A stretch of DNA of 64,000 bases, taken from Paraphysomonas bandaiensis (Eukaryota > Protista > Chrysophyceae). Numbering within the stretch: position 1 is the first letter of the stretch; the number at the start of each line of letters is the position of its first letter. Below are positions 19,977 to 36,749 of the stretch, in pieces. The stretch spans positions 186,001 to 250,000 of the forward strand of contig CBFFRP010000199.1 in NCBI GenBank assembly GCA_965644295.1, given 5' to 3'. The notes beneath the pieces were generated by a model. It worked only from the letters and a program-made list of their open reading frames with translations, was not told the origin of the DNA and did no database searches. The position numbers and the translations under genes are program-made.

Positions 19977-21448
19977 CTACATTTTTTCTATGTAAAATTG
20001 CTTGTTATCACAACTTTCATCTAATTTTGGTGAAGTGATCACGTCATTCTTCCTGTATTGTAAATCGTTGTCCCGTGTTGATCCATAAGCACCCATGTAG
20101 TCATGTTTCAAATGCTTCATTGAACCATTAGAAGAGTTGTCATCATCATCATCGATAGTATGCAAAACTAGAGGATCTTCCCAGTCCGAATTACCAGACT
20201 GACTGGACTGAAGTACCGTGCTGTACTGATTTTGTGGGTGGACATTTTTTATAAATCTAATAAAGTGAATGTCAGCTCAGAAGGAAACACAGAAGTATAC
20301 GCAGTGTATCCCCTTACCGGAAGGTCAAATAACCTACAATGACGATAATGACGAAGTTCACTATCCAAAGAACAAAGGACATCTGTACCTCCCATGAGTC
20401 ACATTATTCACTCTAATTTAAGCACATACCAGACCAAGGTGGGCAAATCGATATGCATTGTGCTTTGTCTCGTCGTCGTATAGGTGAACAAATGCGAGGG
20501 CCAGACACAATCCACAGTTGACTACTGGAGGTAGAAGAGAAGCTGATATAGCCGTACCAACTATAGCATTAAATCCACCCTTCGAAACGGCAAGAATGAC
20601 ACCCATACCACTCGGTGCGGCTACTACCAGACCGAGGGTGAGACTGGCAACTGTTCCACGGGAGAGCATCTCATGGCTGCGGTATTCAGGGTCGAACACC
20701 TGACTCGCACACAGTCCCATTACAATTCCGACTATTAATGACATTGCTACCCCCCAGGCCTCATTGCGAATACCCCGTAGAACAATATCGAATTTCATAG
20801 TCGCAAGACCAAATGTCATGGATAGAATCGGACCCATCATTGGGGACACTACGAAGAATATTACGCCATAATAATCGTTTAAGTGTATGAAACTGGTATA
20901 CTTTACCTAACATTGAAGCAATAACTGCAGTCGAATTGTCTCCCAGAAGCCCAGCTCCGGCAATGAGAGATGCCATCACCATTAATGCCAGAAAATCAAA
21001 AGTGAGATGATTGCCTTCTTCAATTAAATCCTATGCATTGAATTATTCACACAAGCATTGAATTAGTAGATATCGTATACCTGTATTTCATCAATAGACA
21101 TACGATCACTAATTGCATAAGCTTTTTTTGTAGGTTTATTATCTTTAAATACAACAGCCGGACGAGACATCACCACAGCAAACACATCTATAGTACCATA
21201 TGCTTCACCACAACCAATTTTTGATAATCTTGTTACAACATCCTATCAATTATTACTCATTACTATGATATTAATTTAATGGTATGATGAAATACCTGCA
21301 AATGTTTTGGTCGTACTTTAAAGTTAATATGCAGTGAATCTTGTGTAGAAAAGTGTGTAATTTTAAATACAGAAGGACATGAATCGAGTTCTTCCATGAC
21401 TGTGTTGCCATAGTGATGTGGGACCACTATATCAACATGTCTTACCAT
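19977..21448 (-). CDS. DUF389-family membrane protein, 6 exons
   Basis: IAGAGLLGDNSTAVIASMLVSPMMGPI and VGTAISASLLPPVVNCG motifs. Five GT-AG introns restore one reading frame. Confidence 0.9.
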
Positions 21449-21845: not shown

Positions 21846-22391
21846 ATGTCGCAAGTGTTAAGGCTGTTCGTTTTATTAGCATTTCTTTCAACTGGAGTGC
21901 AAAGTGAGTCCAATGCAGATGATGAGAATACTATCTTTGCTCGCAATTATTTGCAACAGTATCCAAGCACGAAAGTTCTTCCATCAGGACTTCACATTCG
22001 AATTATACGAAGTGGTGAGGAACCTCGCAAGCATCCCTCACCAAATTCTCCCTGTCGGTGCCGATATGTAGGGAAAACAATAACCGGCCATGTATTTGGT
22101 GAAAGTGGTGAGGAACCATCTGTTTTTGTTCCAAAAGATGTAATAAAAGGTATTGGAGAAGCATTGCAACTCATGAGCGAAGGTGATGTGTGGGAGTTGG
22201 TGGTTCCAGGAAATATTGGGTATGGTGGATCCACGCTTGTATTTGAGCTGGAATTATTGGAAGTGGGTGAAGAGAAAACTGGATTCGAATTTTCTTATGC
22301 GATGCAAAGCTTAATATGTTTAGCAGTCATTGGAATAATATATATCACTTATAAAAAGTATGGCACAAGTAACAAAGCACACCATGCGTAG
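21846..22391 (+). CDS. FKBP-type peptidyl-prolyl isomerase (Mip-like) with signal peptide and C-terminal TM
   Basis: LPSGL, YVGKTITGHVF, VIKGIGEALQLM, GYG and TLVFELELL motifs; hydrophobic N- and C-termini. Confidence 0.9.
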   Translation: MSQVLRLFVLLAFLSTGVQSESNADDENTIFARNYLQQYPSTKVLPSGLHIRIIRSGEEPRKHPSPNSPCRCRYVGKTITGHVFGESGEEPSVFVPKDVIKGIGEALQLMSEGDVWELVVPGNIGYGGSTLVFELELLEVGEEKTGFEFSYAMQSLICLAVIGIIYITYKKYGTSNKAHHA

Positions 22392-23004: not shown

Positions 23005-23451
23005 CTATAATTCCATGTTTTGAAAAGGGTCATCAAGATCATCCTCATCACTTGAAAGAGTACCGGTCGAGTCAACATCTTCAAACCATAAATTTCTTCC
23101 ATAATTTATACATAACTCAGCTCCAACGGGAATATCACTAATTGCTACATAACGGATAACTTGATTGGCCTTATCAATAGTAAATCCAACGTTATTGCGG
23201 CGCGCATGGTTGAACATGCTCCCAAGCCCAAGTGCTAAACCCTGGTTCAATCCTATTGTATACGTGTAATGCGACAATATATCCCTCTCAGCATTTCCAC
23301 TTTCATCACTAGATGGGGTAGGAAATAGAAGAATTGGTGATATATTGACAAGTTCACCGCTTGATATATGCTGACCCGCGAACACGCCTCGTCCTTTACC
23401 AGGAATACTCTTTATAGTAAGGGAAACTAACGGAAGATCGATATCATCCAT
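23005..23451 (-). CDS. Small SET-domain protein-lysine methyltransferase
   Basis: GKGRGVFA, GSMFNH and ELCINYG motifs; first ATG at 23451. Confidence 0.9.
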   Translation of the reverse strand: MDDIDLPLVSLTIKSIPGKGRGVFAGQHISSGELVNISPILLFPTPSSDESGNAERDILSHYTYTIGLNQGLALGLGSMFNHARRNNVGFTIDKANQVIRYVAISDIPVGAELCINYGRNLWFEDVDSTGTLSSDEDDLDDPFQNMEL

Positions 23452-26311
23452 GATGAAATATAATAACACAGCCACTGGTTATGAGAATAAATGCAAAAAC
23501 TTTAAAGTTTCTTCTTTCATCTACCTTCAAAAGCTGCAATAGTGGGATCAAACTATTGAATGAGGGGTGGGTGGTCATGTACATGCATATACTGCTGTAC
23601 AATAGTGGAATATACGGCACTGTGTATGGTGGTGTACGCACTGTGTACCGTATACACTGGTGTACATCCTGTACGTAGGGTAGCAGCACTGTATGTTATA
23701 CGTATACTATGGTACACAAGTGCTGTACAATGAACTGCTGATATGCACTGTAAACCAATGAAATCAGTTCAAACATCTAACTGTGGATTCTATTCGCCAA
23801 TGCGATTAACATACATACAGCAGTGGTGATATTGACCTGCATCTGTGTGGAATATAGAAGTATATGTGATGCAAGATATATGATGCAAGCATGACATGCT
23901 TGATTCTGTGAATAGACAGGTAAGATGACTAGAAACACCAATCTCTGTCTGATATTGCTATTGTCCGGTAGGAGCGGTTCCCTTACTCTGAAGCGAAGGC
24001 ACAACCTGAGCGAGTACTGCATCTTTGCTCAAACGCAAAGTAATTCATTTCTAACCAATTCTCGATGACTACTACTGCAACATAGCGGGTAGAATGACTA
24101 AGCAACTTGAATGATACGACTATCTCTCTATTATGTAAACGATGGGTATATTTCTTATAATACTTTGTAAACAAGTACATTTAGTTAATATAAACATTAA
24201 TAGTACTTAGGTTACTTAAGTTAGATGGATGTTTGTGGTAGTATATGGCACGAAAGAAAGTACACTTGTTGCATGGGTGAACAAGATAGTTGCGCGCTAC
24301 TCAAATTCTACGGAAGGAGGTAGAGTACAAGTATGGCAACCAACACTGAAAAACATAAACTGATTACTAATACTAAAATGTAGGTACAAATAAACGAAAT
24401 TAATGGATAAATTTCCAGTGTGAGTGGGATTTTGAAAAAGACATATATTTTCCACACTTGTTTGTATCTCGATAAGGTTGGTATCTTCTCTTTCTGATAT
24501 AGTTGCAGTTGTACAATCGTACATTTCTGCTCTGAAATATTGTCTATGCTACTTGAGTGGTGGAGTCTTTTTTTCTGTCCTCTGTTCTCTATTGACTTTT
24601 GAACATTTTTACTTGTTTACATCGTGAAAAGAAAGTTATGTTAGACTAGATAAAAGACTATTATCAGTTAAAACACATCAACAACATAATTTTATATTTC
24701 TTTCCTATCAACCTCTGATTAACTTCCGTATCTTGAATCGTCATGATACTTCAGTTTCATTCACAGTTATAGCTATATAGTAATTTTGACTATGTATTAT
24801 AGTTTTTTACACACTTTATTTAACGTATTATACAATTCTAACTTAGGGAAACATAAGTATTCCAACATCCTCTAACTTTGCTTTTACTTCATCTATTCTG
24901 CGTTGGTCTCTTTTTACTTGCTCTGTGATTCGATCGTTCTGTAAAGTGTAATAACCAGCCATATCTGGTTATTTTATGCTATATGAGCTCTCTATTGTAT
25001 ATGTTTAAGTTTGTACATACTACCTGGACAACATAGGTTGAATATTATTATTATTACCATACCTCACATTAAGCTATATGATATATTATGAATATGACAA
25101 TTCATGCTTATCATTGATACTTATATATCTATTCAAAAGACAAAGAAAGATAGGATTACCAATAATGAAGTTCAATGATGAAGATATTATGATTGATGGT
25201 ATATATGTATATGTTCTTATTATATATATATATTAATGCTTAAGGCTGGAGAAGTTTACTGGAGAATTCCGGGTTTGATATCTACGCTGATAGACGTGTA
25301 TTGCCAGATTATCCAGTAATACAGTTGTACTTATGTATTTCATTAGGTACTCATTGTTTATTGAACTGTACTTGGAAGTACGTATACAAGGCTTCAACTA
25401 CAATGAGAATACTGAATGTATCTTCCCTTTTGCATTGATGATGAATCAGTTGTGATCAGGCTGAGCTATTAGTGATGTATATGGATGAAGGTCATTCCTG
25501 TAGGCCTTCCTCTGGCCTGGGAATCATATGTATATATTGATTGTTGATAATAAGATGCAATTTCTGTACTCTGGAAGTTGTTTGTAGATAGTATTGTAGT
25601 TGTAGTCATATTCATTGTTAGCTATCTATTAGTACCATGGAGGGAGAACCTAAAATGGAGGTTCATGACTCTAGTCTGTTTCATTTAGCTCTGAGAAGGA
25701 TCAGAGCAATGATTATTGAAGAACAACAGTCGATATCGAGTGCTGATGAGCAGCGCGTCAGAGATATTGGACTCGTTACTGGATTAGATGATGCTGACAC
25801 CAATAGGAGGGTGTTACAAAAGCATAATGCGTAGTCAAATGCGAGTACAATTTATGACTAGGTTTATAACTAAAATTGACTAGGTTGAATCATTTATTAC
25901 TTTGACCAGGTGTGATTAGGTTGAATAATATTCCCCGCTCTATTGAATATACTGTCAACATAAATTCTTCGTTCTTCTAGGAGTAATGTAATTAATTACT
26001 TAAACCAATACAATTGTGCGAGGTGTTATCACAAACACATCAATGTCAAGAAAGCGGTATGAACTGTATAGAAACACTCAAAACACTCATAGAGTAGGCA
26101 TAAGAGCATTTGCTCGCTTTCCCAATCGAAGTGAAAGAGTCAAGTTGTCATGCTTGTGTAGTATATATCGTACCACTCTAACGAATGGTCAATCAAAATT
26201 TCTGAAGTCACAAAAGTGCTAAGCAAAACTTAAAAACAAATTATTGTAGAATGTACCAAAGTACCTGTCACTCCGATATCACATATATGAAAGGGGCAAT
26301 TCGTAGAAGTA

Positions 26312-29300
26312 CTATTCGCAAACAAACAAATTACATTCTTCCATTTCGTGTATGCGTTGGTAGTCTGCAACAAGTTGTTCTTCGTCTGGATTGATAAGAA
26401 CTACAACCCCACCAAATGTAAAACAGTTAATGGTGGGCTTTACGTCACACCCCGGCTTGAGAAATATCTCCATACTCACGAACGACTTCATTTGTCGAAT
26501 TTCTTCCACAAGATTGATATTCACTTCCGCTAGTGTTCCACTGGTACGACAGATAAGAAACAACAGGCGTCCATCACAATATCTCACTGTTGGCTACAAA
26601 TATACAACGTAAAAACACCAAAACCTTACATTACAAAACAGTATCAAACCTCATTTGGAAGGGCATAAAAAGCTTCTGTAGAGGTATAAGTAGCCACGGT
26701 AGCTTCTACTTGGTTTAATCGTAGTACCGAGTCAGAAATAGGAATCCAAGACCCCTCGGCTCCATGGCATCTAGAGCCCACCTCGACTAGCACTGGTTCT
26801 CCCTTAAACCACTTAACCTCGCCATGACTGGGGCCATTCTTGATACCTAGTGCTGTAGCTACCTTACGCATGTACGTTACCAACTGTTCGTATATCTCAG
26901 GGTTGTCAGACATGATCTTCAGTGCCTGCCCATAGCACACAAAAGGAGCACCATTCGCGGGCCTGCGGTCATACTCCCATATAGCAACAACCTTGTGCTC
27001 CCCATCGCGACTGACCATATCTACAACGTACTCCTGGCCCTCAAGGTACTCTTGAACAAGTACACTGCGATTGACTAGTCCGAGACCATTCACCTTACCC
27101 AAAATACTTCCGAATGCATTCTGCACTTCAGAGACACTCAAGCACAGAGTAACATCATCCGATCCTGCGCTGTCCATGGGCTTCACGATTACTTTGAAAG
27201 GATCAGGTTGCCACTCCTCTAAAAAAGTAGCAATCTCTGTCCAAGTAGTAGCCTGAAGCTGCTTTACGGCTCGAATACCTGCTGATTTTATTGTTTCCCC
27301 CATAATATACTTGTTCCGACGGGCCTCGCTCTGGTCTGTTCCATTTGTACGCAATCCAAAGTGACTCGATAACTTATCAGCAAGCTCCACTCCAGTTTCT
27401 GCGCCTGGAATAATGGCTACTATATTTTCATTGATCTTCCTAATATTAGATGCCATAACTTCAATGTCATCGTTATATCCAATTATTGCTTCAAATGATA
27501 AATTAAGGCCTTCTGGGACGAGATTTTGCAGATTGTCAAGCTTTTCTATCTCCGCGCTGTATATTGCAATGACCTTTATTCCTCTCTGTGTGAACTCAGC
27601 AGCAAGAGAAGCACCAGTGGAAAACGGGTCTACCACAGCAGCGTACTGCACCACTGGAATTTCAGTAGATTCGGTAACAAATAGACCGATTTGCTCCAGT
27701 TCCGCAATTCTAAAGAAAAGACGTACTTAATAGCTGTCTACAAAGACAGTAACGTCATACCTATCATAGTCGCGGTTGAGCTGTTCTTCATTCGCATGTG
27801 CCAGCTTGATGCACCCTCCCCATGAAAAGCAGTTCTCAGTCTTTTTGAGTACATCCTTCGGTTTTACAAAAAATTGATGACCACGATAGGAAGCCATATG
27901 CGTAATTTCCCTCATGGCCATGTCATTGTACCTTTTAACCCTGCCCTCCTGATAACTTACAATCCATTTCAAAGCTCCATAGCTCTCCCTATTGGATATC
28001 TACAATGTATTAAGACAATGTTTCCCACTATTAAAAACGTACCTCACTAGGAATGGTTTCAAAATCACAATCATTTCCACAAAAAACATTTACTGTAGCA
28101 TCAGCTTGAGTAAACCCAACACATTCATTCTACGAACTATTAGGTTAAAAATAAAATATTAAAAACATACCGCTACATCAACCCAAAGACCGTCACCACC
28201 ATGGCATCTAGAGCCCACCTCGACTAGCACTGGTTCTCCCTTAAACCACTTAACCTCGCCATGACTGGGGCCATTCTTGATGCCTAGTGCTGTAGCTACC
28301 TTACGCATGTACGTTACCAACTGTTCGTATATCTCAGGGTTGTCAGACATGATCTTCAGTGCCTGCCCATGACACACAAAAGGAGCACCATTCGCGGGCC
28401 TGCGGTCATACTCCCATATAGCAACAACCTTGTGCTCCCCATCGCGACTGACCATATCTACAACGTACTCCTGGCCCTCAAGGTACTCTTGAACAAGTAC
28501 ACTGCGATTGACTAGTCCGAGACCATTCACCTTACCCAAAATACTTCCGAATGCATTCTGCACTTCAGAGACACTCAAGCACAGAGTAACATCATCCGAT
28601 CCTGCGCTGTCCATGGGCTTCACGATTACTTTGAAAGGATCAGGTTGCCACTCCTCTAAAAAAGTAGCAATCTCTGTCCAAGTAGTAGCCTGAAGCTGCT
28701 TTACGGCTCGAATACCTGCTGATTTTATTGTTTCCCCCATAATATACTTGTTCCGACGGGCCTCGCTCTGGTCTGTACCATTTGTACGCAATCCAAAGTG
28801 ACTCGATAACTTATCAGCAAGCTCCACTCCAGTTTCTGCGCCTGCAATGATTGCTACTATCGGCCACTTTAATGACGCAAGCTCTGCCGTTAAAGTCTCG
28901 AAAGCAATATCACTCTCTATATTACTGTTCAATGAGCATACCCCGCTAAAGGAGAAGTCAAGTCCCTCTGGAACCATATCTACCAGGTCCGCCAGGTTTC
29001 CAGACATCGCTGAAATTACCCTAAATCCCCTCAAGTAACAGAGATACGCCAGCATAGCACCTGTGGAAAACGTATCCACGATAACAACAGCTTCGTCACG
29101 TTGCTCAGTAACTTCAGTTAAAGCTTTATCAAACTTAAAACGATGTACTGGTGGGATTGGTGTGGTAGTATCAGCTTCTTGCCAAAAGTGTTTCCTGTAC
29201 ATAACATCTTCTAAGCTAAGAGTACGACGTCGCTGTAATTTCACTTTATCAACAAAAGTTACAGCTCGTCTCATGTTTGGTCCATTAGCATCAACCCCAT

Positions 29301-29514
29301 GATTTATTTTACGATTATGTGTAGAAAGCATACGACGTTCATCAAATGTAATAGCTTTACTCATTATAGGGCCTTGAGAGTTGATCTCAGCAAATTTTGG
29401 TAATGTTTTAAATGAATTTTCTATAATAAACTCAGATTTCTTTGTTGTTTTTGTAGGACTACAAGGAGGAGCTGAAGGGATGTCATCCTGTGAATGAGAT
29501 TGACTTGTTCCCAT
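26312..29514 (-). CDS. Tandem (double) ATP-grasp ligase, L-amino-acid-ligase/carnosine-synthase-like; 5 exons, about 1000 aa
   Basis: Two modules, each with VD(T/P)FSTGA, GAETGV, RRNKY, IVKPMDSAGS, QEYLEGQEY, HGEV and EVGSRCHG plus a C-terminal domain. Four GT-AG introns (about 28130-28170, 28000-28042, 27710-27760 and 26597-26649) join all ORFs in frame. Confidence 0.9.
26762..28844. repeat. Near-identical 646-bp intragenic direct repeat (26762-27407 and 28199-28844)
   Basis: Offset of 1437 bp; only 4 nucleotide differences found by eye. Confidence 0.95.
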
Positions 29515-31751: not shown

Positions 31752-33486
31752 TCAAAATTCATCTACAAGACTTTCATTACTCTCAGTCACTGCTGTGGCC
31801 TCTACGAGCATTTTTCCTGGCGGCGCAGAGGGTCTGCTCGAAGAGTATTTACTCCTACTTCTAGTGCAGTCTGACTGCGAGCAATTTGTCTCACCAGTTG
31901 CAGTAGATGTGTACTCCTCCGTAGTCGTAATTTGGAAATTTGTTTCACTCCTTCTGCTCTTTCCCCCCCACATGAACCACAAGAACAAGTTATGGTGGAA
32001 AGAAAGGTGAAATATCAAGAGCAGCTGATGTATCAAGAGCAGCAAGCACAAGACTGCCAGGATGCCAATGACTATATAGAAAGGTGCCAAGTTAACACTG
32101 TAATCCTTCTCGTGGCTGCTCGACAAAATCTCTACAGTCGTTGAAGAGGTGGGCAGTTCAGTTGGTGACATTGTCGGTGAAGTTGGGATTGAGGTAGAAA
32201 GTGAAGTAGGCATTACACTTGGCGTTACAGTGGGCATTGCAGTTAAAGTGGAAAAGTCAACAAAGAAAAAGGCAGAATCTCCATGCACAAGCGGAGTGAC
32301 GTCGTCTACAACGCGTAACAGGTAAAAACCACTGCCACTATCTGGCGCCACCATAAAAGTTAAAGAGCTGTCACCTGTATTTAGAACCGCGCCAGTGCTC
32401 TCAAAGATGTCCGCGTTGTGTATGGTGTTCCAGCAAACCAGCTGCCCACCAGACAGGCGAAAGCAAAACTCGAAATGCACGAAGTTTGAAGTACAGTTTG
32501 CTGCTTCCCACCGGACGGCTAAACTGCGCGATACCGTCGTGATGGAAACAGAATCCCCCCATGCCGGTGACATGACATTGTAGCCCAAGCACGGTGTCAC
32601 GGTGGGCGACGTGGTGGGCATATCAGTTGGGGTTGCTGTGGGCACTGAATTTGGAGTTGATGTGGGAATAGAGGTTGAAGCTATAGTGGGTTTATAAGTT
32701 GGCATTGTTGAGGGTAATGATGAAGTGGGCATTACTGTGGACAGTGATGGCGATGTGGAAGGCGTTGTTGTGATTCCGACTTCTAAGTAAGCTTCAACTT
32801 CATGTATTTCAGGCAAAGATAGTTCTCTATCGTACATTATCACTTCTGAAATTGCCCAGTGACTTTGTTCAGAGTATAACGTATTCACTCCTAAATCGCA
32901 GAGGGATCCAAAAACACCATTCGTGGTGCTTCTTTGGACACCATTACTACGGTAAAGATTATACTGGTCCGATGAAATAACCCAGTCAGTTCCGTGAGAA
33001 TCCCGACAACAATCAGTAATCCATGCACTGTGAAACGCAACACCTGCGCGGCCGTGATGAAATCCAGAGAGCCAATTACATGGCCAGCTTAACGAAGAAC
33101 CAGTAAAAATCCTAGACATTGAGCCTCCAATATACTTGGTGCGGTGGAAGAGAGTATATCTGCCAGATGGCACTTGGAAATTCAAAATTGCACTGGGACC
33201 TCCGTAGAGGTACGGCCGAAAATCTTCATCGTAAGCCTGCGAAATAGTACCATAGGTAAAAGCGTGACGACCATTACCCGAAATGTCTGCCCATTGACTC
33301 CCTGAGATGACATTATCCGCACGAAAATGAAAGAAGATCGATGAGGGCAACGCATTTACCACAATAACTAGCACGAAAGTTTATAAAATAAGCGATTAAC
33401 AGAAACAAAGGATCAACGTTCGTTTTACCTTGAATTACTTGTATGAGAATCACCTTTAAAAAGACAGTAATAAATCTGGATATCAT
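31752..33486 (-). CDS. Type I membrane protein: signal peptide, LamG/ConA-like lectin domain, S/T/P repeats, small beta domain, TM; 2 exons
   Basis: Exon 1 MISRFITVFLKVILIQVIQ is spliced through an intron at about 33370-33428. Motifs QWADISGNGRHA and ISEVIMYDRELS..EI..VE.YL are typical of LamG-like folds. PT repeats and a hydrophobic helix follow. Confidence 0.82.
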
Positions 33487-35615: not shown

Positions 35616-36749
35616 CTATGCTATTTTACTATCTGGCGAGATAGCATGGATGACCATATGATGAATACTTTTGTACTTACGCTTCACATACGTACATCTC
35701 TCTGTTTCATACTTAAAAAATACAGATGGCAATTCGAGGTGTCTCTCAATGGCATCGATACTAGTAAATACGGGGACTACGGGGGTATCACTCGAGACAT
35801 CACCATTGGTACCCTTTGCAGTGCATTCAGAATAAGTTGAAACCCCCTGCAAACCTTTGTCGCTTGATACGGAAGCAGAGGCCTTGTCATGTGTCGCTTC
35901 CTCAGAAGGTGGTGCCTCAGGCCGGAATTCAGCACACACAGGTGGATGAAACAAATCACACAAGCGTTGGGCTAGCCGATGCTCATCACACCTACCATCT
36001 CCGCTACACATGTCCGTCGCAGATTCATTTCCTTCAGCCATAGAAATATCACTATGATCATTACGTAATGAAGAGGATTTCTGAGTTGCTGTTGACTCTC
36101 TCTCGAGCTGACGCGGTACGTCGCTGGCTGACACCATAGCACGCACATCGCAAACCACCTCCCGTACATCACTTTGAAGGTAAAATAATCCATTCGGCAT
36201 AAGATGTGCCCATACACTCCGCAGTAGAGACTGGGTCAAAATTCGCCTCTTCTTGTGCTTTCCCTTCCAATGGGGATCTGGGAATTGAACGCACACAATA
36301 TATACACTACAGCGCTGCTTGTCAAGATCACTAAGAATAGTCTCCAAGTCACCAGCTATGATATTTGCATGAATAAATCCTAAATTCTCGAAAGAATGAA
36401 CTTTACGGTTACTTTCAGTTTCATTCGTATCATGCACCTCACTGTGGTCCTGTTCCTTGTCATAATTCAATACAACCTCAGGGCAATGGTGCTGTCTAGT
36501 GGAAAGAAGAAGAGCATCTAACCTCAGCTCTAATCCCAAATAATTATAATCTATACAGTCTCTAGCAGCATTCAGTAACCATTCGCCTTCTCCACATCCT
36601 AAGTCTATAATGAACGGTTTGGATGTATCACGGAAAGACTGTTTTATCCAATCTGATGACAGTGTTGATAGGCAATTATTGTGTTTTGATTTAAGGGGGT
36701 TCAACTGACGAGGTGGCTCCCCATCGCGTCTTCTTTTACGCCGTCCCAT
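35616..36749 (-). CDS. tRNA (guanine-N7)-methyltransferase, TrmB/Trm8-like
   Basis: IDLGCGEG, YLGLELR, QFPDPHWKGKHKKRR, YLQSDV and C-terminal TERCTYV motifs. Confidence 0.9.
   Translation of the reverse strand: MGRRKRRRDGEPPRQLNPLKSKHNNCLSTLSSDWIKQSFRDTSKPFIIDLGCGEGEWLLNAARDCIDYNYLGLELRLDALLLSTRQHHCPEVVLNYDKEQDHSEVHDTNETESNRKVHSFENLGFIHANIIAGDLETILSDLDKQRCSVYIVCVQFPDPHWKGKHKKRRILTQSLLRSVWAHLMPNGLFYLQSDVREVVCDVRAMVSASDVPRQLERESTATQKSSSLRNDHSDISMAEGNESATDMCSGDGRCDEHRLAQRLCDLFHPPVCAEFRPEAPPSEEATHDKASASVSSDKGLQGVSTYSECTAKGTNGDVSSDTPVVPVFTSIDAIERHLELPSVFFKYETERCTYVKRKYKSIHHMVIHAISPDSKIA

What the first reader, a model, noticed from the sequence alone, without database searches (positions are those of the whole stretch)
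26312..29514. Single-chain double ATP-grasp ligase with two differently tuned modules
Seen: splicing four GT-AG introns fuses two complete ATP-grasp modules into one protein of about 1000 aa. Its N-terminus MGTSQS fits the N-myristoylation consensus MGxxxS and is followed by a basic Ser/Thr-rich extension (RRAVT, RRRTLS). The N- and C-terminal domains of the two modules are strongly diverged (ENCFSWGG versus INCFTFGG; CHGGDGLW versus CHGAEGSW). Known: L-amino-acid ligases and carnosine synthase use this fold for ribosome-independent amide bond formation, and residues outside the ATP core contribute to substrate choice. Inference: a membrane-tethered, phospho-regulated two-step peptide/amide assembly enzyme making an unknown small metabolite in a protist. 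This is the best candidate for an undescribed system in the window.
Basis: partly seen in the sequence, partly recalled or inferred. Interest (0 to 1): 0.8.

Follow-up and report, generated by a model that had tools for sequence, protein, structure and literature searches.

The report
Fused double ATP-grasp ligase gene
This is a real chrysophyte gene encoding two complete amide-bond-forming ATP-grasp ligase units in one N-myristoylatable protein; it belongs to a family found across stramenopiles, including Phytophthora, whose product nobody has identified.

Summary
On the minus strand, 29514-26312 is a 5-exon gene with four GT-AG introns (41, 43, 51 and 56 nt). It encodes 1003 aa with two full L-amino-acid-ligase-type ATP-grasp modules after a 140-aa N-terminal extension that starts MGTSQS.

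The fusion is not an artefact. The same genome, close or identical to Paraphysomonas MMETSP1103, has at least five such loci. Complete transcripts match two of them exactly. One transcript splices the inter-module intron at the position homologous to ours. In the other locus one exon runs straight across the junction.

Both modules keep every ATP-grasp hallmark motif. The architecture is not unique. Double-module proteins of about 950-1030 aa occur across stramenopiles (chrysophytes, Triparma, brown algae, all oomycetes sampled) and are only auto-named. I found no functional study.

New here: the cores of the two modules are homogenised locus by locus by gene conversion (662 nt at 98.9% in this gene). 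The N-domains and C-terminal lids stay module-specific across the four paralogues.

The MG start fits the myristoylation pattern and is conserved from oomycetes to this gene. "Phospho-regulated" and "two-step assembly" remain inference. Expression of this particular copy could not be checked. The scan had already noted a double ATP-grasp ligase on another piece of this genome.

The parts
28171..29514 (-). Exon 1 (448 codons): start codon, disordered N-terminal extension (aa 1-140, about 29514-29095), then module 1 N-domain, central ATP-grasp domain and the start of the C-domain
   Evidence: Pfam ATP-grasp_4 at 1.4e-14. MG start fits PS00008.
28130..28170 (-). Intron 1, 41 nt, GTATGT...TCGTAG
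   Evidence: There is no counterpart in paralogue C147.
28043..28129 (-). Exon 2 (29 codons), module 1 C-domain helix region
   Evidence: The frame is continuous. It is homologous to the end of exon 4 in module 2.
28000..28042 (-). Intron 2, 43 nt, GT-AG, after ...IPSE
   Evidence: The same position as the transcript-proven intron of paralogue C147 (AMPSE|C).
27761..27999 (-). Exon 3: module 1 C-terminal lid subdomain (ENCFSWGG)
   Evidence: Groups with the module 1 lids of the paralogues, 41-54% identity versus 23-35% to module 2 lids.
27710..27760 (-). Intron 3, 51 nt, GT-AG, phase 2: the inter-module intron. If retained it carries an in-frame stop.
   Evidence: The homologous intron (NQDYRR|IEELQ) is spliced in transcript P0240 of paralogue C147.
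26650..27709 (-). Exon 4 (353 codons): short linker, then module 2 N-domain, central domain and the start of the C-domain. There is no ATG before residue ~80 of the exon.
   Evidence: Pfam ATP-grasp_4 at 7.4e-15. PDB L-amino acid ligase 30vh at E 2e-37.
26594..26649 (-). Intron 4, 56 nt, GT-AG, after ...LPNE
   Evidence: The same position as the proven intron of C147 (SYPSE|P).
26312..26593 (-). Exon 5: module 2 C-terminal lid subdomain (INCFTFGG) and TAG stop
   Evidence: LAL_C2 at 25.3 bits, below the cut-off of 29.4. The module 2 lid clade has bootstrap 100.
28199..28860 (-). Gene-conversion tract, module 1 copy
   Evidence: 98.9% identity over 662 nt with 26762-27423. Third codon positions are 95-100% identical.
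26762..27423 (-). Gene-conversion tract, module 2 copy
   Evidence: Same calls. The 7 differences are 5 synonymous, 1 Ala/Pro at the tract edge and 1 His/Tyr.

Best explanation
The region is one protein-coding gene of a heterotrophic chrysophyte (Paraphysomonas). It encodes a 1003-aa protein built as follows:
- An N-myristoylatable, intrinsically disordered 140-aa extension that carries conserved short motifs.
- Two complete L-amino-acid-ligase-type ATP-grasp modules, joined by a linker of about 15 aa.

Each module should bind ATP-Mg, activate a carboxylate as an acyl-phosphate and couple it to an amine, as bacterial L-amino acid ligases do (inferred from motifs and fold).

The fusion is the covalent version of the usual homodimer of these ligases. 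The ATP-binding cores of the two halves are kept nearly identical by recurrent intragenic gene conversion. The N-domains and C-terminal lids, the parts that shape the substrate pocket in characterised L-amino acid ligases, are module-specific and older than the paralogue expansion.

The most likely working mode is therefore two ligations with different substrate pairs on one polypeptide. These could be consecutive steps towards a tripeptide-like amide, or two related products. The reaction would take place at a membrane surface to which the myristoyl group reversibly recruits the enzyme.

Shown: the gene structure, the fusion, conservation of the catalytic motifs, the concerted evolution and the family distribution. 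Inferred: the activity, the substrate difference, lipidation and any phospho-control.
For: - **Gene model.**: four GT-AG introns and a continuous frame.
- **Fusion.** One search finds at least five double-module loci in the same genome (C199, C378, C147, C123, C577). In one search a single 605-aa ORF at C577 runs from the module 1 lid into the module 2 N-domain. In some searches the complete MMETSP1103 transcripts P0240 (988 aa) and P0121 (978 aa) map exactly onto C147 and C577. The introns of P0240 lie at the positions of our introns 2, 3 and 4, including the inter-module one. Module 2 has no start codon of its own.
- **Family and fold.** ATP-grasp_4 is found in both modules. The best solved relatives are L-amino acid ligases: 30vh at 2e-37, then RizA and BacD. 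The AF2 model of paralogue P0240 has pLDDT 84.9 and residues 1-125 disordered. Each module superposes on L-amino acid ligases 3vot, 4wd3 and 3vmm at TM 0.72-0.81.
- **Competence.** The VKP lysine, the SAGS loop, the QE[YF]L hinge, HxE and E[VI]G[SA]RCHGG are kept in both modules of 19 proteins.
- **Concerted evolution with module-specific flanks.** In the core tree M1 and M2 pair per locus (bootstrap 100, 98, 95, 67). In the N-domain tree there are M1 and M2 clades (99, 94). The module 2 lid clade has bootstrap 100. Conversion tracts of about 220, 90 and 45 codons are seen in three loci and none in the fourth.
- **Myristoylation signal.** 43 of 109 long family members start with MG and 40 of those fit PS00008, as do all four type-A paralogues.
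- **Precedent.** RhiM and RhiC are homodimeric L-amino acid ligases that act one after the other (PMC13579937).
Against: - No RNA evidence exists for this copy.
- No residue distinguishes module 1 from module 2 across the whole family: 0 at the 70% threshold in 56 proteins. A universal division of labour is therefore not shown, and module differences are lineage-specific.
- LAL_C2 is below its Pfam cut-off in exon 5 and absent in exon 3.
- The inter-module geometry is only moderately confident (pTM 0.62) and comes from a paralogue.
- No neighbouring biosynthetic genes hint at a product.
Confidence: 0.6

Rival explanations
1. Covalent pseudo-homodimer. Both modules catalyse the same single ligation, and the fusion merely fixes the dimer that L-amino acid ligases form anyway. 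The divergence of the N-domains and lids reflects asymmetric packing rather than different substrates.
For: No family-wide module-specific residues exist. 97-128 columns are conserved and identical in both modules. The cores are repeatedly homogenised. L-amino acid ligases such as RhiM and RhiC are homodimers.
Against: Module-specific N-domain and lid clades persist through four paralogues despite gene conversion next door (bootstrap 99, 94 and 100). Oomycetes have 26 positions fixed differently in the two modules. This suggests selection for difference.
Confidence: 0.25
2. A protein-modifying ligase. Like RimK or tubulin-tyrosine-ligase-type ATP-grasp enzymes, the modules would add amino acids to a protein or peptide substrate at a membrane rather than make a free small metabolite.
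For: The long conserved disordered N-terminal extension with docking-like motifs and a lipid anchor signal suggests targeting to partners. No metabolic gene cluster lies nearby.
Against: The closest sequence and fold relatives are free-amino-acid ligases (30vh, RizA, BacD, BL00235). RimK and TTL families were not among the Pfam or PDB matches.
Confidence: 0.08
3. Two adjacent tandem-duplicate genes wrongly joined by the splice model, or an assembly artefact that created the near-identical 662-nt repeat.
For: This copy has no transcript evidence. An intron-retaining isoform of paralogue C147 exists in the transcriptome (Transcript_8770: ORFs P0047 of 566 aa and P0241 of 447 aa).
Against: Module 2 lacks a start codon. 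The homologous junction is spliced in P0240 and is intron-free in C577 and P0121. About 100 double-module proteins from many species share the layout. The repeat carries 7 real differences, and conversion tracts differ in length among loci.
Confidence: 0.05

Closest known systems
Bacterial L-amino acid ligases (PDB 30vh 'L-amino acid ligase'; RizA/RhiM 4wd3; BacD/YwfE 3vmm, 3wnz; BL00235 3vot)
   Same: Each module has the same three-domain ATP-grasp fold (TM 0.72-0.81). It shares the sequence motifs, including E-x-[AG]-x-R in place of the classical E-x-N, with phmmer E down to 2e-37. Acyl-phosphate chemistry is expected.
   Different: Those enzymes are single-module proteins of about 390-470 aa that dimerise non-covalently. 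Here two modules are fused, preceded by a conserved myristoylatable disordered extension, in a eukaryote. The substrates are unknown.
DdaF, dapdiamide A synthase of Pantoea agglomerans (the name automatic pipelines give to family members)
   Same: An ATP-grasp amide ligase of the L-amino acid ligase type. Eukaryotic 'dapdiamide A synthase' homologues were noted as restricted to stramenopiles, haptophytes and Symbiodiniaceae (PMC8399598).
   Different: Orthology was not tested here and no eukaryotic member has been assayed. DdaF is single-module and acts within a bacterial gene cluster, and no such cluster is present here.
RhiM + RhiC of rhizocticin biosynthesis
   Same: Two L-amino acid ligases with different specificities act consecutively to build a tripeptide-like product, and both are dimers (PMC13579937). 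This is the functional model for a two-step reading.
   Different: They are separate polypeptides in a bacterial cluster. Consecutive action is only inferred for the fused protein.
Carbamoyl phosphate synthetase large subunit
   Same: The classic single chain with two ATP-grasp modules that arose by internal duplication. It is the top full-length Foldseek match by E-value (1e-28).
   Different: The global superposition is poor (TM 0.27-0.30, rmsd about 22 A, 12-13% identity). The chemistry differs (two phosphorylations rather than amide ligations), and there are extra oligomerisation and allosteric domains. The gene here is not a member.
Carnosine synthase CARNS1
   Same: A eukaryotic ATP-grasp_4 amide ligase that makes a dipeptide (general knowledge).
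   Different: It has a single catalytic module. It was not compared here, and no CARNS1 match appeared in any search.

Membership tests
ATP-grasp superfamily (Pfam ATP-grasp_4, PF13535) | Profile match above the curated cut-off | tested here: met
   54.5 bits (exon 1) and 55.4 bits (exon 4) against a cut-off of 27
ATP-grasp superfamily (Pfam ATP-grasp_4, PF13535) | ATP-binding lysine, glycine/serine-rich loop, hinge, two Mg-binding acidic residues and the catalytic arginine | tested here: met
   VKP, SAGS, QEYL, HGE and EVGSR are present in both modules and conserved in 38 modules of 19 proteins
ATP-grasp superfamily (Pfam ATP-grasp_4, PF13535) | Three-domain grasp fold | tested here: met
   AF2 model of paralogue P0240 (pLDDT 84.9) matches ATP-grasp structures. 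It was modelled on the paralogue, not on this copy.
L-amino acid ligases (BacD/RizA type) | Closest solved relatives are L-amino acid ligases over the N-domain and central domain | tested here: met
   30vh at E 2e-37 over residues 6-299 of exon 4. RizA 3e-9, BacD 1e-8.
L-amino acid ligases (BacD/RizA type) | LAL_C2 C-terminal domain (PF18603) | tested here: inconclusive
   Exon 5 scores 25.3 bits, below the cut-off of 29.4, and exon 3 has no match. Many homologues carry a precomputed PF18603 hit.
L-amino acid ligases (BacD/RizA type) | ATP-dependent ligation of unprotected amino acids with release of ADP and phosphate | not testable with these tools
   Needs an enzyme assay
DdaF / dapdiamide A synthase | Orthology to Pantoea DdaF and addition of Val to fumaramoyl-DAP | not tested
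   Only automatic names in databases. PMC8399598 places the eukaryotic sequences apart from the bacterial ones.
Carbamoyl phosphate synthetase-type double ATP-grasp | CPS-like mutual arrangement of the two modules and accessory domains | tested here: not met
   TM 0.27-0.30, rmsd about 22 A, 12-13% identity
N-myristoylated proteins | N-terminal M-G-{EDRKHPFYW}-x-x-[STAGCN]-{P} | tested here: met
   MGTSQSH fits, as do the four type-A paralogues and 40 of 43 MG-starting homologues
N-myristoylated proteins | Actual lipid attachment and membrane association | not testable with these tools
   Needs metabolic labelling and a G2A mutant

The most novel reading that the evidence does not exclude
The family makes a still unknown, stramenopile-wide small amide such as a tripeptide-like compound. 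Two differently specified ligase modules on one myristoylated chain would carry out two consecutive ATP-dependent ligations. The enzyme would be recruited to membranes and switched by kinase or phosphatase action on the conserved R-A-x-T-F motifs of its disordered N-terminus. Its two halves would be kept mechanistically matched by intragenic gene conversion.
Probability: 0.25. Interest if true: 0.7.

Novelty: new variant of a known kind. Interest (0 to 1): 0.45.

Why it matters
ATP-grasp L-amino acid ligases are known almost only from bacterial antibiotic pathways. This gene shows that a fused double version, with a conserved lipid-anchor signal and a conserved regulatory-looking tail, is a standing part of stramenopile proteomes, from bacterivorous chrysophytes to brown algae and crop-destroying oomycetes, yet no product or role is known. 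Identifying the product would add a ribosome-independent peptide or amide pathway to eukaryotic metabolism. It could also point to a lineage-specific target in oomycetes. The locus-by-locus homogenisation of the catalytic core beside protected substrate-side domains is a clean natural example of mosaic concerted evolution inside a single gene.

Tried and rejected
- **Transcript of this copy.** I looked for a full-length transcript or orthologue by word search with P0240. Nothing was closer than 55%.
- **Module-diagnostic residues.** I looked for residues that separate the two modules across the whole family. There were none at 85% or 70%.
- **Single ancient M1|M2 split.** I tested this on a whole-module tree. 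It was rejected: modules group by lineage (7 changes), which fits concerted evolution.
- **CPS-like architecture.** Rejected on TM and rmsd.
- **Gene neighbourhood.** I checked it for a biosynthetic cluster. The neighbours are unrelated: Methyltransf_4, FKBP, SET and DUF389.
- **Literature.** Searches for tandem, double or fused ATP-grasp, for oomycete ATP-grasp, for PITG_20994 and SDRG_04930, and for the PDB code 30vh gave no functional study.
- **The 881-aa ORF at C378.** It turned out to be an (ACAT)n microsatellite read-through, not a long N-terminus.
- **Joined protein.** The joined (spliced) protein of this gene was deliberately not built or searched. Only single exons were used, by reference.
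- **Exhaustive representative search.** Not used, because no claim here rests on the absence of relatives.
Full report
**Observation**

Reading the sequence and computing the model gives five exons:
- 29514-28171
- 28129-28043
- 27999-27761
- 27709-26650
- 26593-26312, including the TAG stop

The four introns are 41, 43, 51 and 56 nt long and all are GT...AG. The reading frame is continuous, with 3009 coding nt (1003 aa).

The ATG at 29514 is the first start after an upstream stop. All quoted peptide strings are present. Pfam ATP-grasp_4 is found in both large exons at 54.5 and 55.4 bits against a cut-off of 27. The last exon gives a sub-threshold LAL_C2 match.

Every search used single exons by reference, and the joined step is left out.

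**Is it one gene?**

Module 2 begins in exon 4 with a short linker and has no ATG until about 80 residues into its N-domain. It therefore cannot be translated as a complete unit on its own.

A six-frame search of the window's own genome (62.5 Mb, 669 contigs) found the same tandem pair at four other loci: C378, C147, C123 and C577. It also found a C-terminal fragment on C57.

At C577 a single 605-aa open frame runs from the lid of module 1 straight into the N-domain of module 2, with no intron.

Two complete transcriptome-derived proteins of Paraphysomonas MMETSP1103 map exactly onto two of the loci:
- P0240 (988 aa) maps to C147.
- P0121 (978 aa) maps to C577.

This also identifies the organism as that strain or a very close relative.

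The introns of P0240 sit at AMPSE|C, NQDYRR|IEELQ and SYPSE|P. These are the positions of introns 2, 3 (inter-module) and 4 of the gene under study. Splicing across the inter-module junction is therefore proven for a paralogue and inferred by homology for this copy.

Direct RNA evidence for this copy could not be obtained. No full-length orthologous transcript is in the protein collection.

An intron-retaining isoform of C147 also exists (Transcript_8770). Its ORFs are P0047, which is module 1 plus 22 intron-encoded residues, and P0241. Retention of our intron 3 would likewise stop translation after module 1.

**What it is**

- By sequence, the nearest solved proteins are L-amino acid ligases: 30vh at E 2e-37 over residues 6-299 of exon 4, then RizA, BacD and BL00235.
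- An AlphaFold2 model of the paralogue P0240, built with 56 family members, has mean pLDDT 84.9 and pTM 0.62. Residues 1-125 are disordered.
- Each module superposes on L-amino acid ligases with TM 0.72-0.81.
- The whole chain aligns to carbamoyl phosphate synthetase only nominally (TM 0.27-0.30, rmsd about 22 A). The double layout is therefore not CPS-like.
- Both modules keep every hallmark of an active ATP-grasp enzyme: the VKP lysine, the SAGS loop, the QE[YF]L hinge, HxE and E[VI]G[SA]RCHGG. They do so in all 38 modules of 19 proteins examined.
- Neither module looks dead.

**Concerted evolution**

The two modules of this gene share a 662-nt tract, 28860-28199 versus 27423-26762. It is 98.9% identical, with 95-100% identity at third codon positions. 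The N-domain codions just upstream are only 41-64% identical. The seven differences are five synonymous, one Ala/Pro at the tract edge and one His/Tyr. That argues against an assembly collapse.

The other loci show tracts of different extent:

| Locus | Conversion tract |
|---|---|
| C199 (this gene) | about 220 codons |
| C378 | about 90 codons |
| C123 | about 45 codons |
| C147 | none |

Trees by region make the pattern explicit:
- On the core columns, module 1 and module 2 pair within each locus (bootstrap 100, 98, 95, 67).
- On the N-domain, the four module 1 copies and the four module 2 copies form separate clades (99 and 94).
- The C-terminal lids of module 2 form a clade with bootstrap 100. 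Lid identity is 47-59% within module 2 and 23-39% between modules.

So the duplication predates the paralogue expansion. The catalytic core is repeatedly homogenised, and the substrate-side subdomains are kept distinct.

Across the whole family, however, modules group by lineage. No residue distinguishes module 1 from module 2 in all 56 proteins, while oomycetes alone have 26 such positions. A universal division of labour is not shown.

**N-terminal extension**

MGTSQSH fits the PROSITE myristoylation pattern, and so do the paralogues (MGNNNT, MGNQSS, MGNEQS). Of 109 long family members, 43 start with MG and 40 of these fit the pattern. These include essentially all the oomycete proteins.

The extension carries conserved short motifs:
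- F-[KR]-x-L followed by R-A-x-T-F-D-E-R
- a second [KR]-[AS]-x-T-F
- D-V-[ML]-[FY]-R-[RK]-[HY]-F

RRRTLS is not conserved.

The motifs have an arginine at -3 of a Thr, which fits a basophilic kinase site. Some copies also fit the RVxF phosphatase-1 docking pattern. Both readings are inference only. A single myristate without a second signal gives weak, reversible membrane binding (general knowledge), so 'tethered' is too strong.

**Distribution and prior knowledge**

Word searches returned about a hundred double-module proteins of roughly 850-1080 aa. They come from:
- chrysophytes (Paraphysomonas, Ochromonas, Epipyxis)
- Triparma
- Chrysophaeum and Aureoumbra
- Ectocarpus and Undaria
- every oomycete genus sampled (Phytophthora including PITG_20994, Plasmopara, Peronospora, Pythium, Lagenidium, Saprolegnia, Achlya, Aphanomyces)

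Their names are generic or automatic: 'ATP-grasp domain-containing protein', 'biotin carboxylase', 'Dapdiamide A synthase', 'Argininosuccinate lyase 2'.

One paper notes 'dapdiamide A synthase' homologues restricted to stramenopiles, haptophytes and Symbiodiniaceae, and up-regulated in symbiotic Durusdinium. It offers no biochemical test and, in the passages my term search returned, no remark on the double architecture (PMC8399598). Searches for tandem, double or fused ATP-grasp enzymes and for locus tags found no functional study.

The neighbouring genes in the window are unrelated: Methyltransf_4, FKBP, SET and DUF389.

**Mechanism and rivals**

The best-supported reading is a single-chain, covalently fixed version of the L-amino acid ligase dimer. 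RhiM and RhiC are homodimers and act consecutively (PMC13579937). In this reading both halves are active and the module-specific N-domains and lids give two substrate pairs. The main rival is a pseudo-homodimer doing one reaction twice. The lack of family-wide module signatures favours that rival. The persistence of module-specific subdomains next to an actively converted core counts against it. A protein-modifying role, and a mis-joined gene pair or assembly artefact, are minor rivals.

**Verdict**

The claim of an undescribed system is only partly right:
- The architecture is a widespread but uncharacterised stramenopile family.
- It is a new variant of the L-amino acid ligase kind rather than something categorically new.
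- The mosaic gene conversion and the conserved myristoylatable, motif-bearing N-terminus are the points worth following.
- The scan had already noted the near-identical cores of this same stretch (s1-448496) and a 'membrane-tethered double ATP-grasp ligase' on another piece of this genome (s1-442448), consistent with the paralogous loci found here.

Noticed in passing
L013:5527-6474 and L016:1584-2471: An (ACAT)n-type microsatellite of about 1 kb lies directly upstream of two paralogous double-ligase genes (C378 and C577). It creates spurious long ORFs, such as the '881-aa' frame that runs into the true MG start.
   Followed up: partly
L017:3179-3732 (G000 contig C57): An orphan fragment covers only the last ~95 residues of exon 4 and most of exon 5 of module 2 (80-83% identity). 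No upstream module was detected. It is probably a partial duplicate or pseudogene.
   Followed up: no
L014:3632-3727 (C147 inter-module intron): The MMETSP1103 transcriptome holds both a spliced isoform (P0240, fusion) and an isoform that retains the 96-nt inter-module intron. The retained form gives a module 1-only ORF (P0047, 566 aa) and a downstream module 2 ORF that starts at an ATG inside the intron (P0241). This could be pre-mRNA or a regulated way to make a single-module protein.
   Followed up: partly
window 29514-29095 (-), aa 1-140: Two conserved [KR]-A-[VIL]-T-F motifs (KAITF, RAVTF) fit the RVxF protein phosphatase 1 docking pattern as well as an R-x-x-T kinase site. Related motifs recur in oomycete and type-B family members.
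   Followed up: partly
window 31755-33374 (-): A 540-aa open frame next to the gene has no Pfam family at E<=0.001.
   Followed up: no
window 35619-36749 (-), 21846-22388 (+), 23008-23475 (-), 20421-20849 (-): The neighbouring ORFs carry Methyltransf_4, FKBP_C, SET and DUF389 domains. They have no evident link to the ligase.
   Followed up: yes
It may be part of the same expansion of amide-ligase genes.
   Followed up: no
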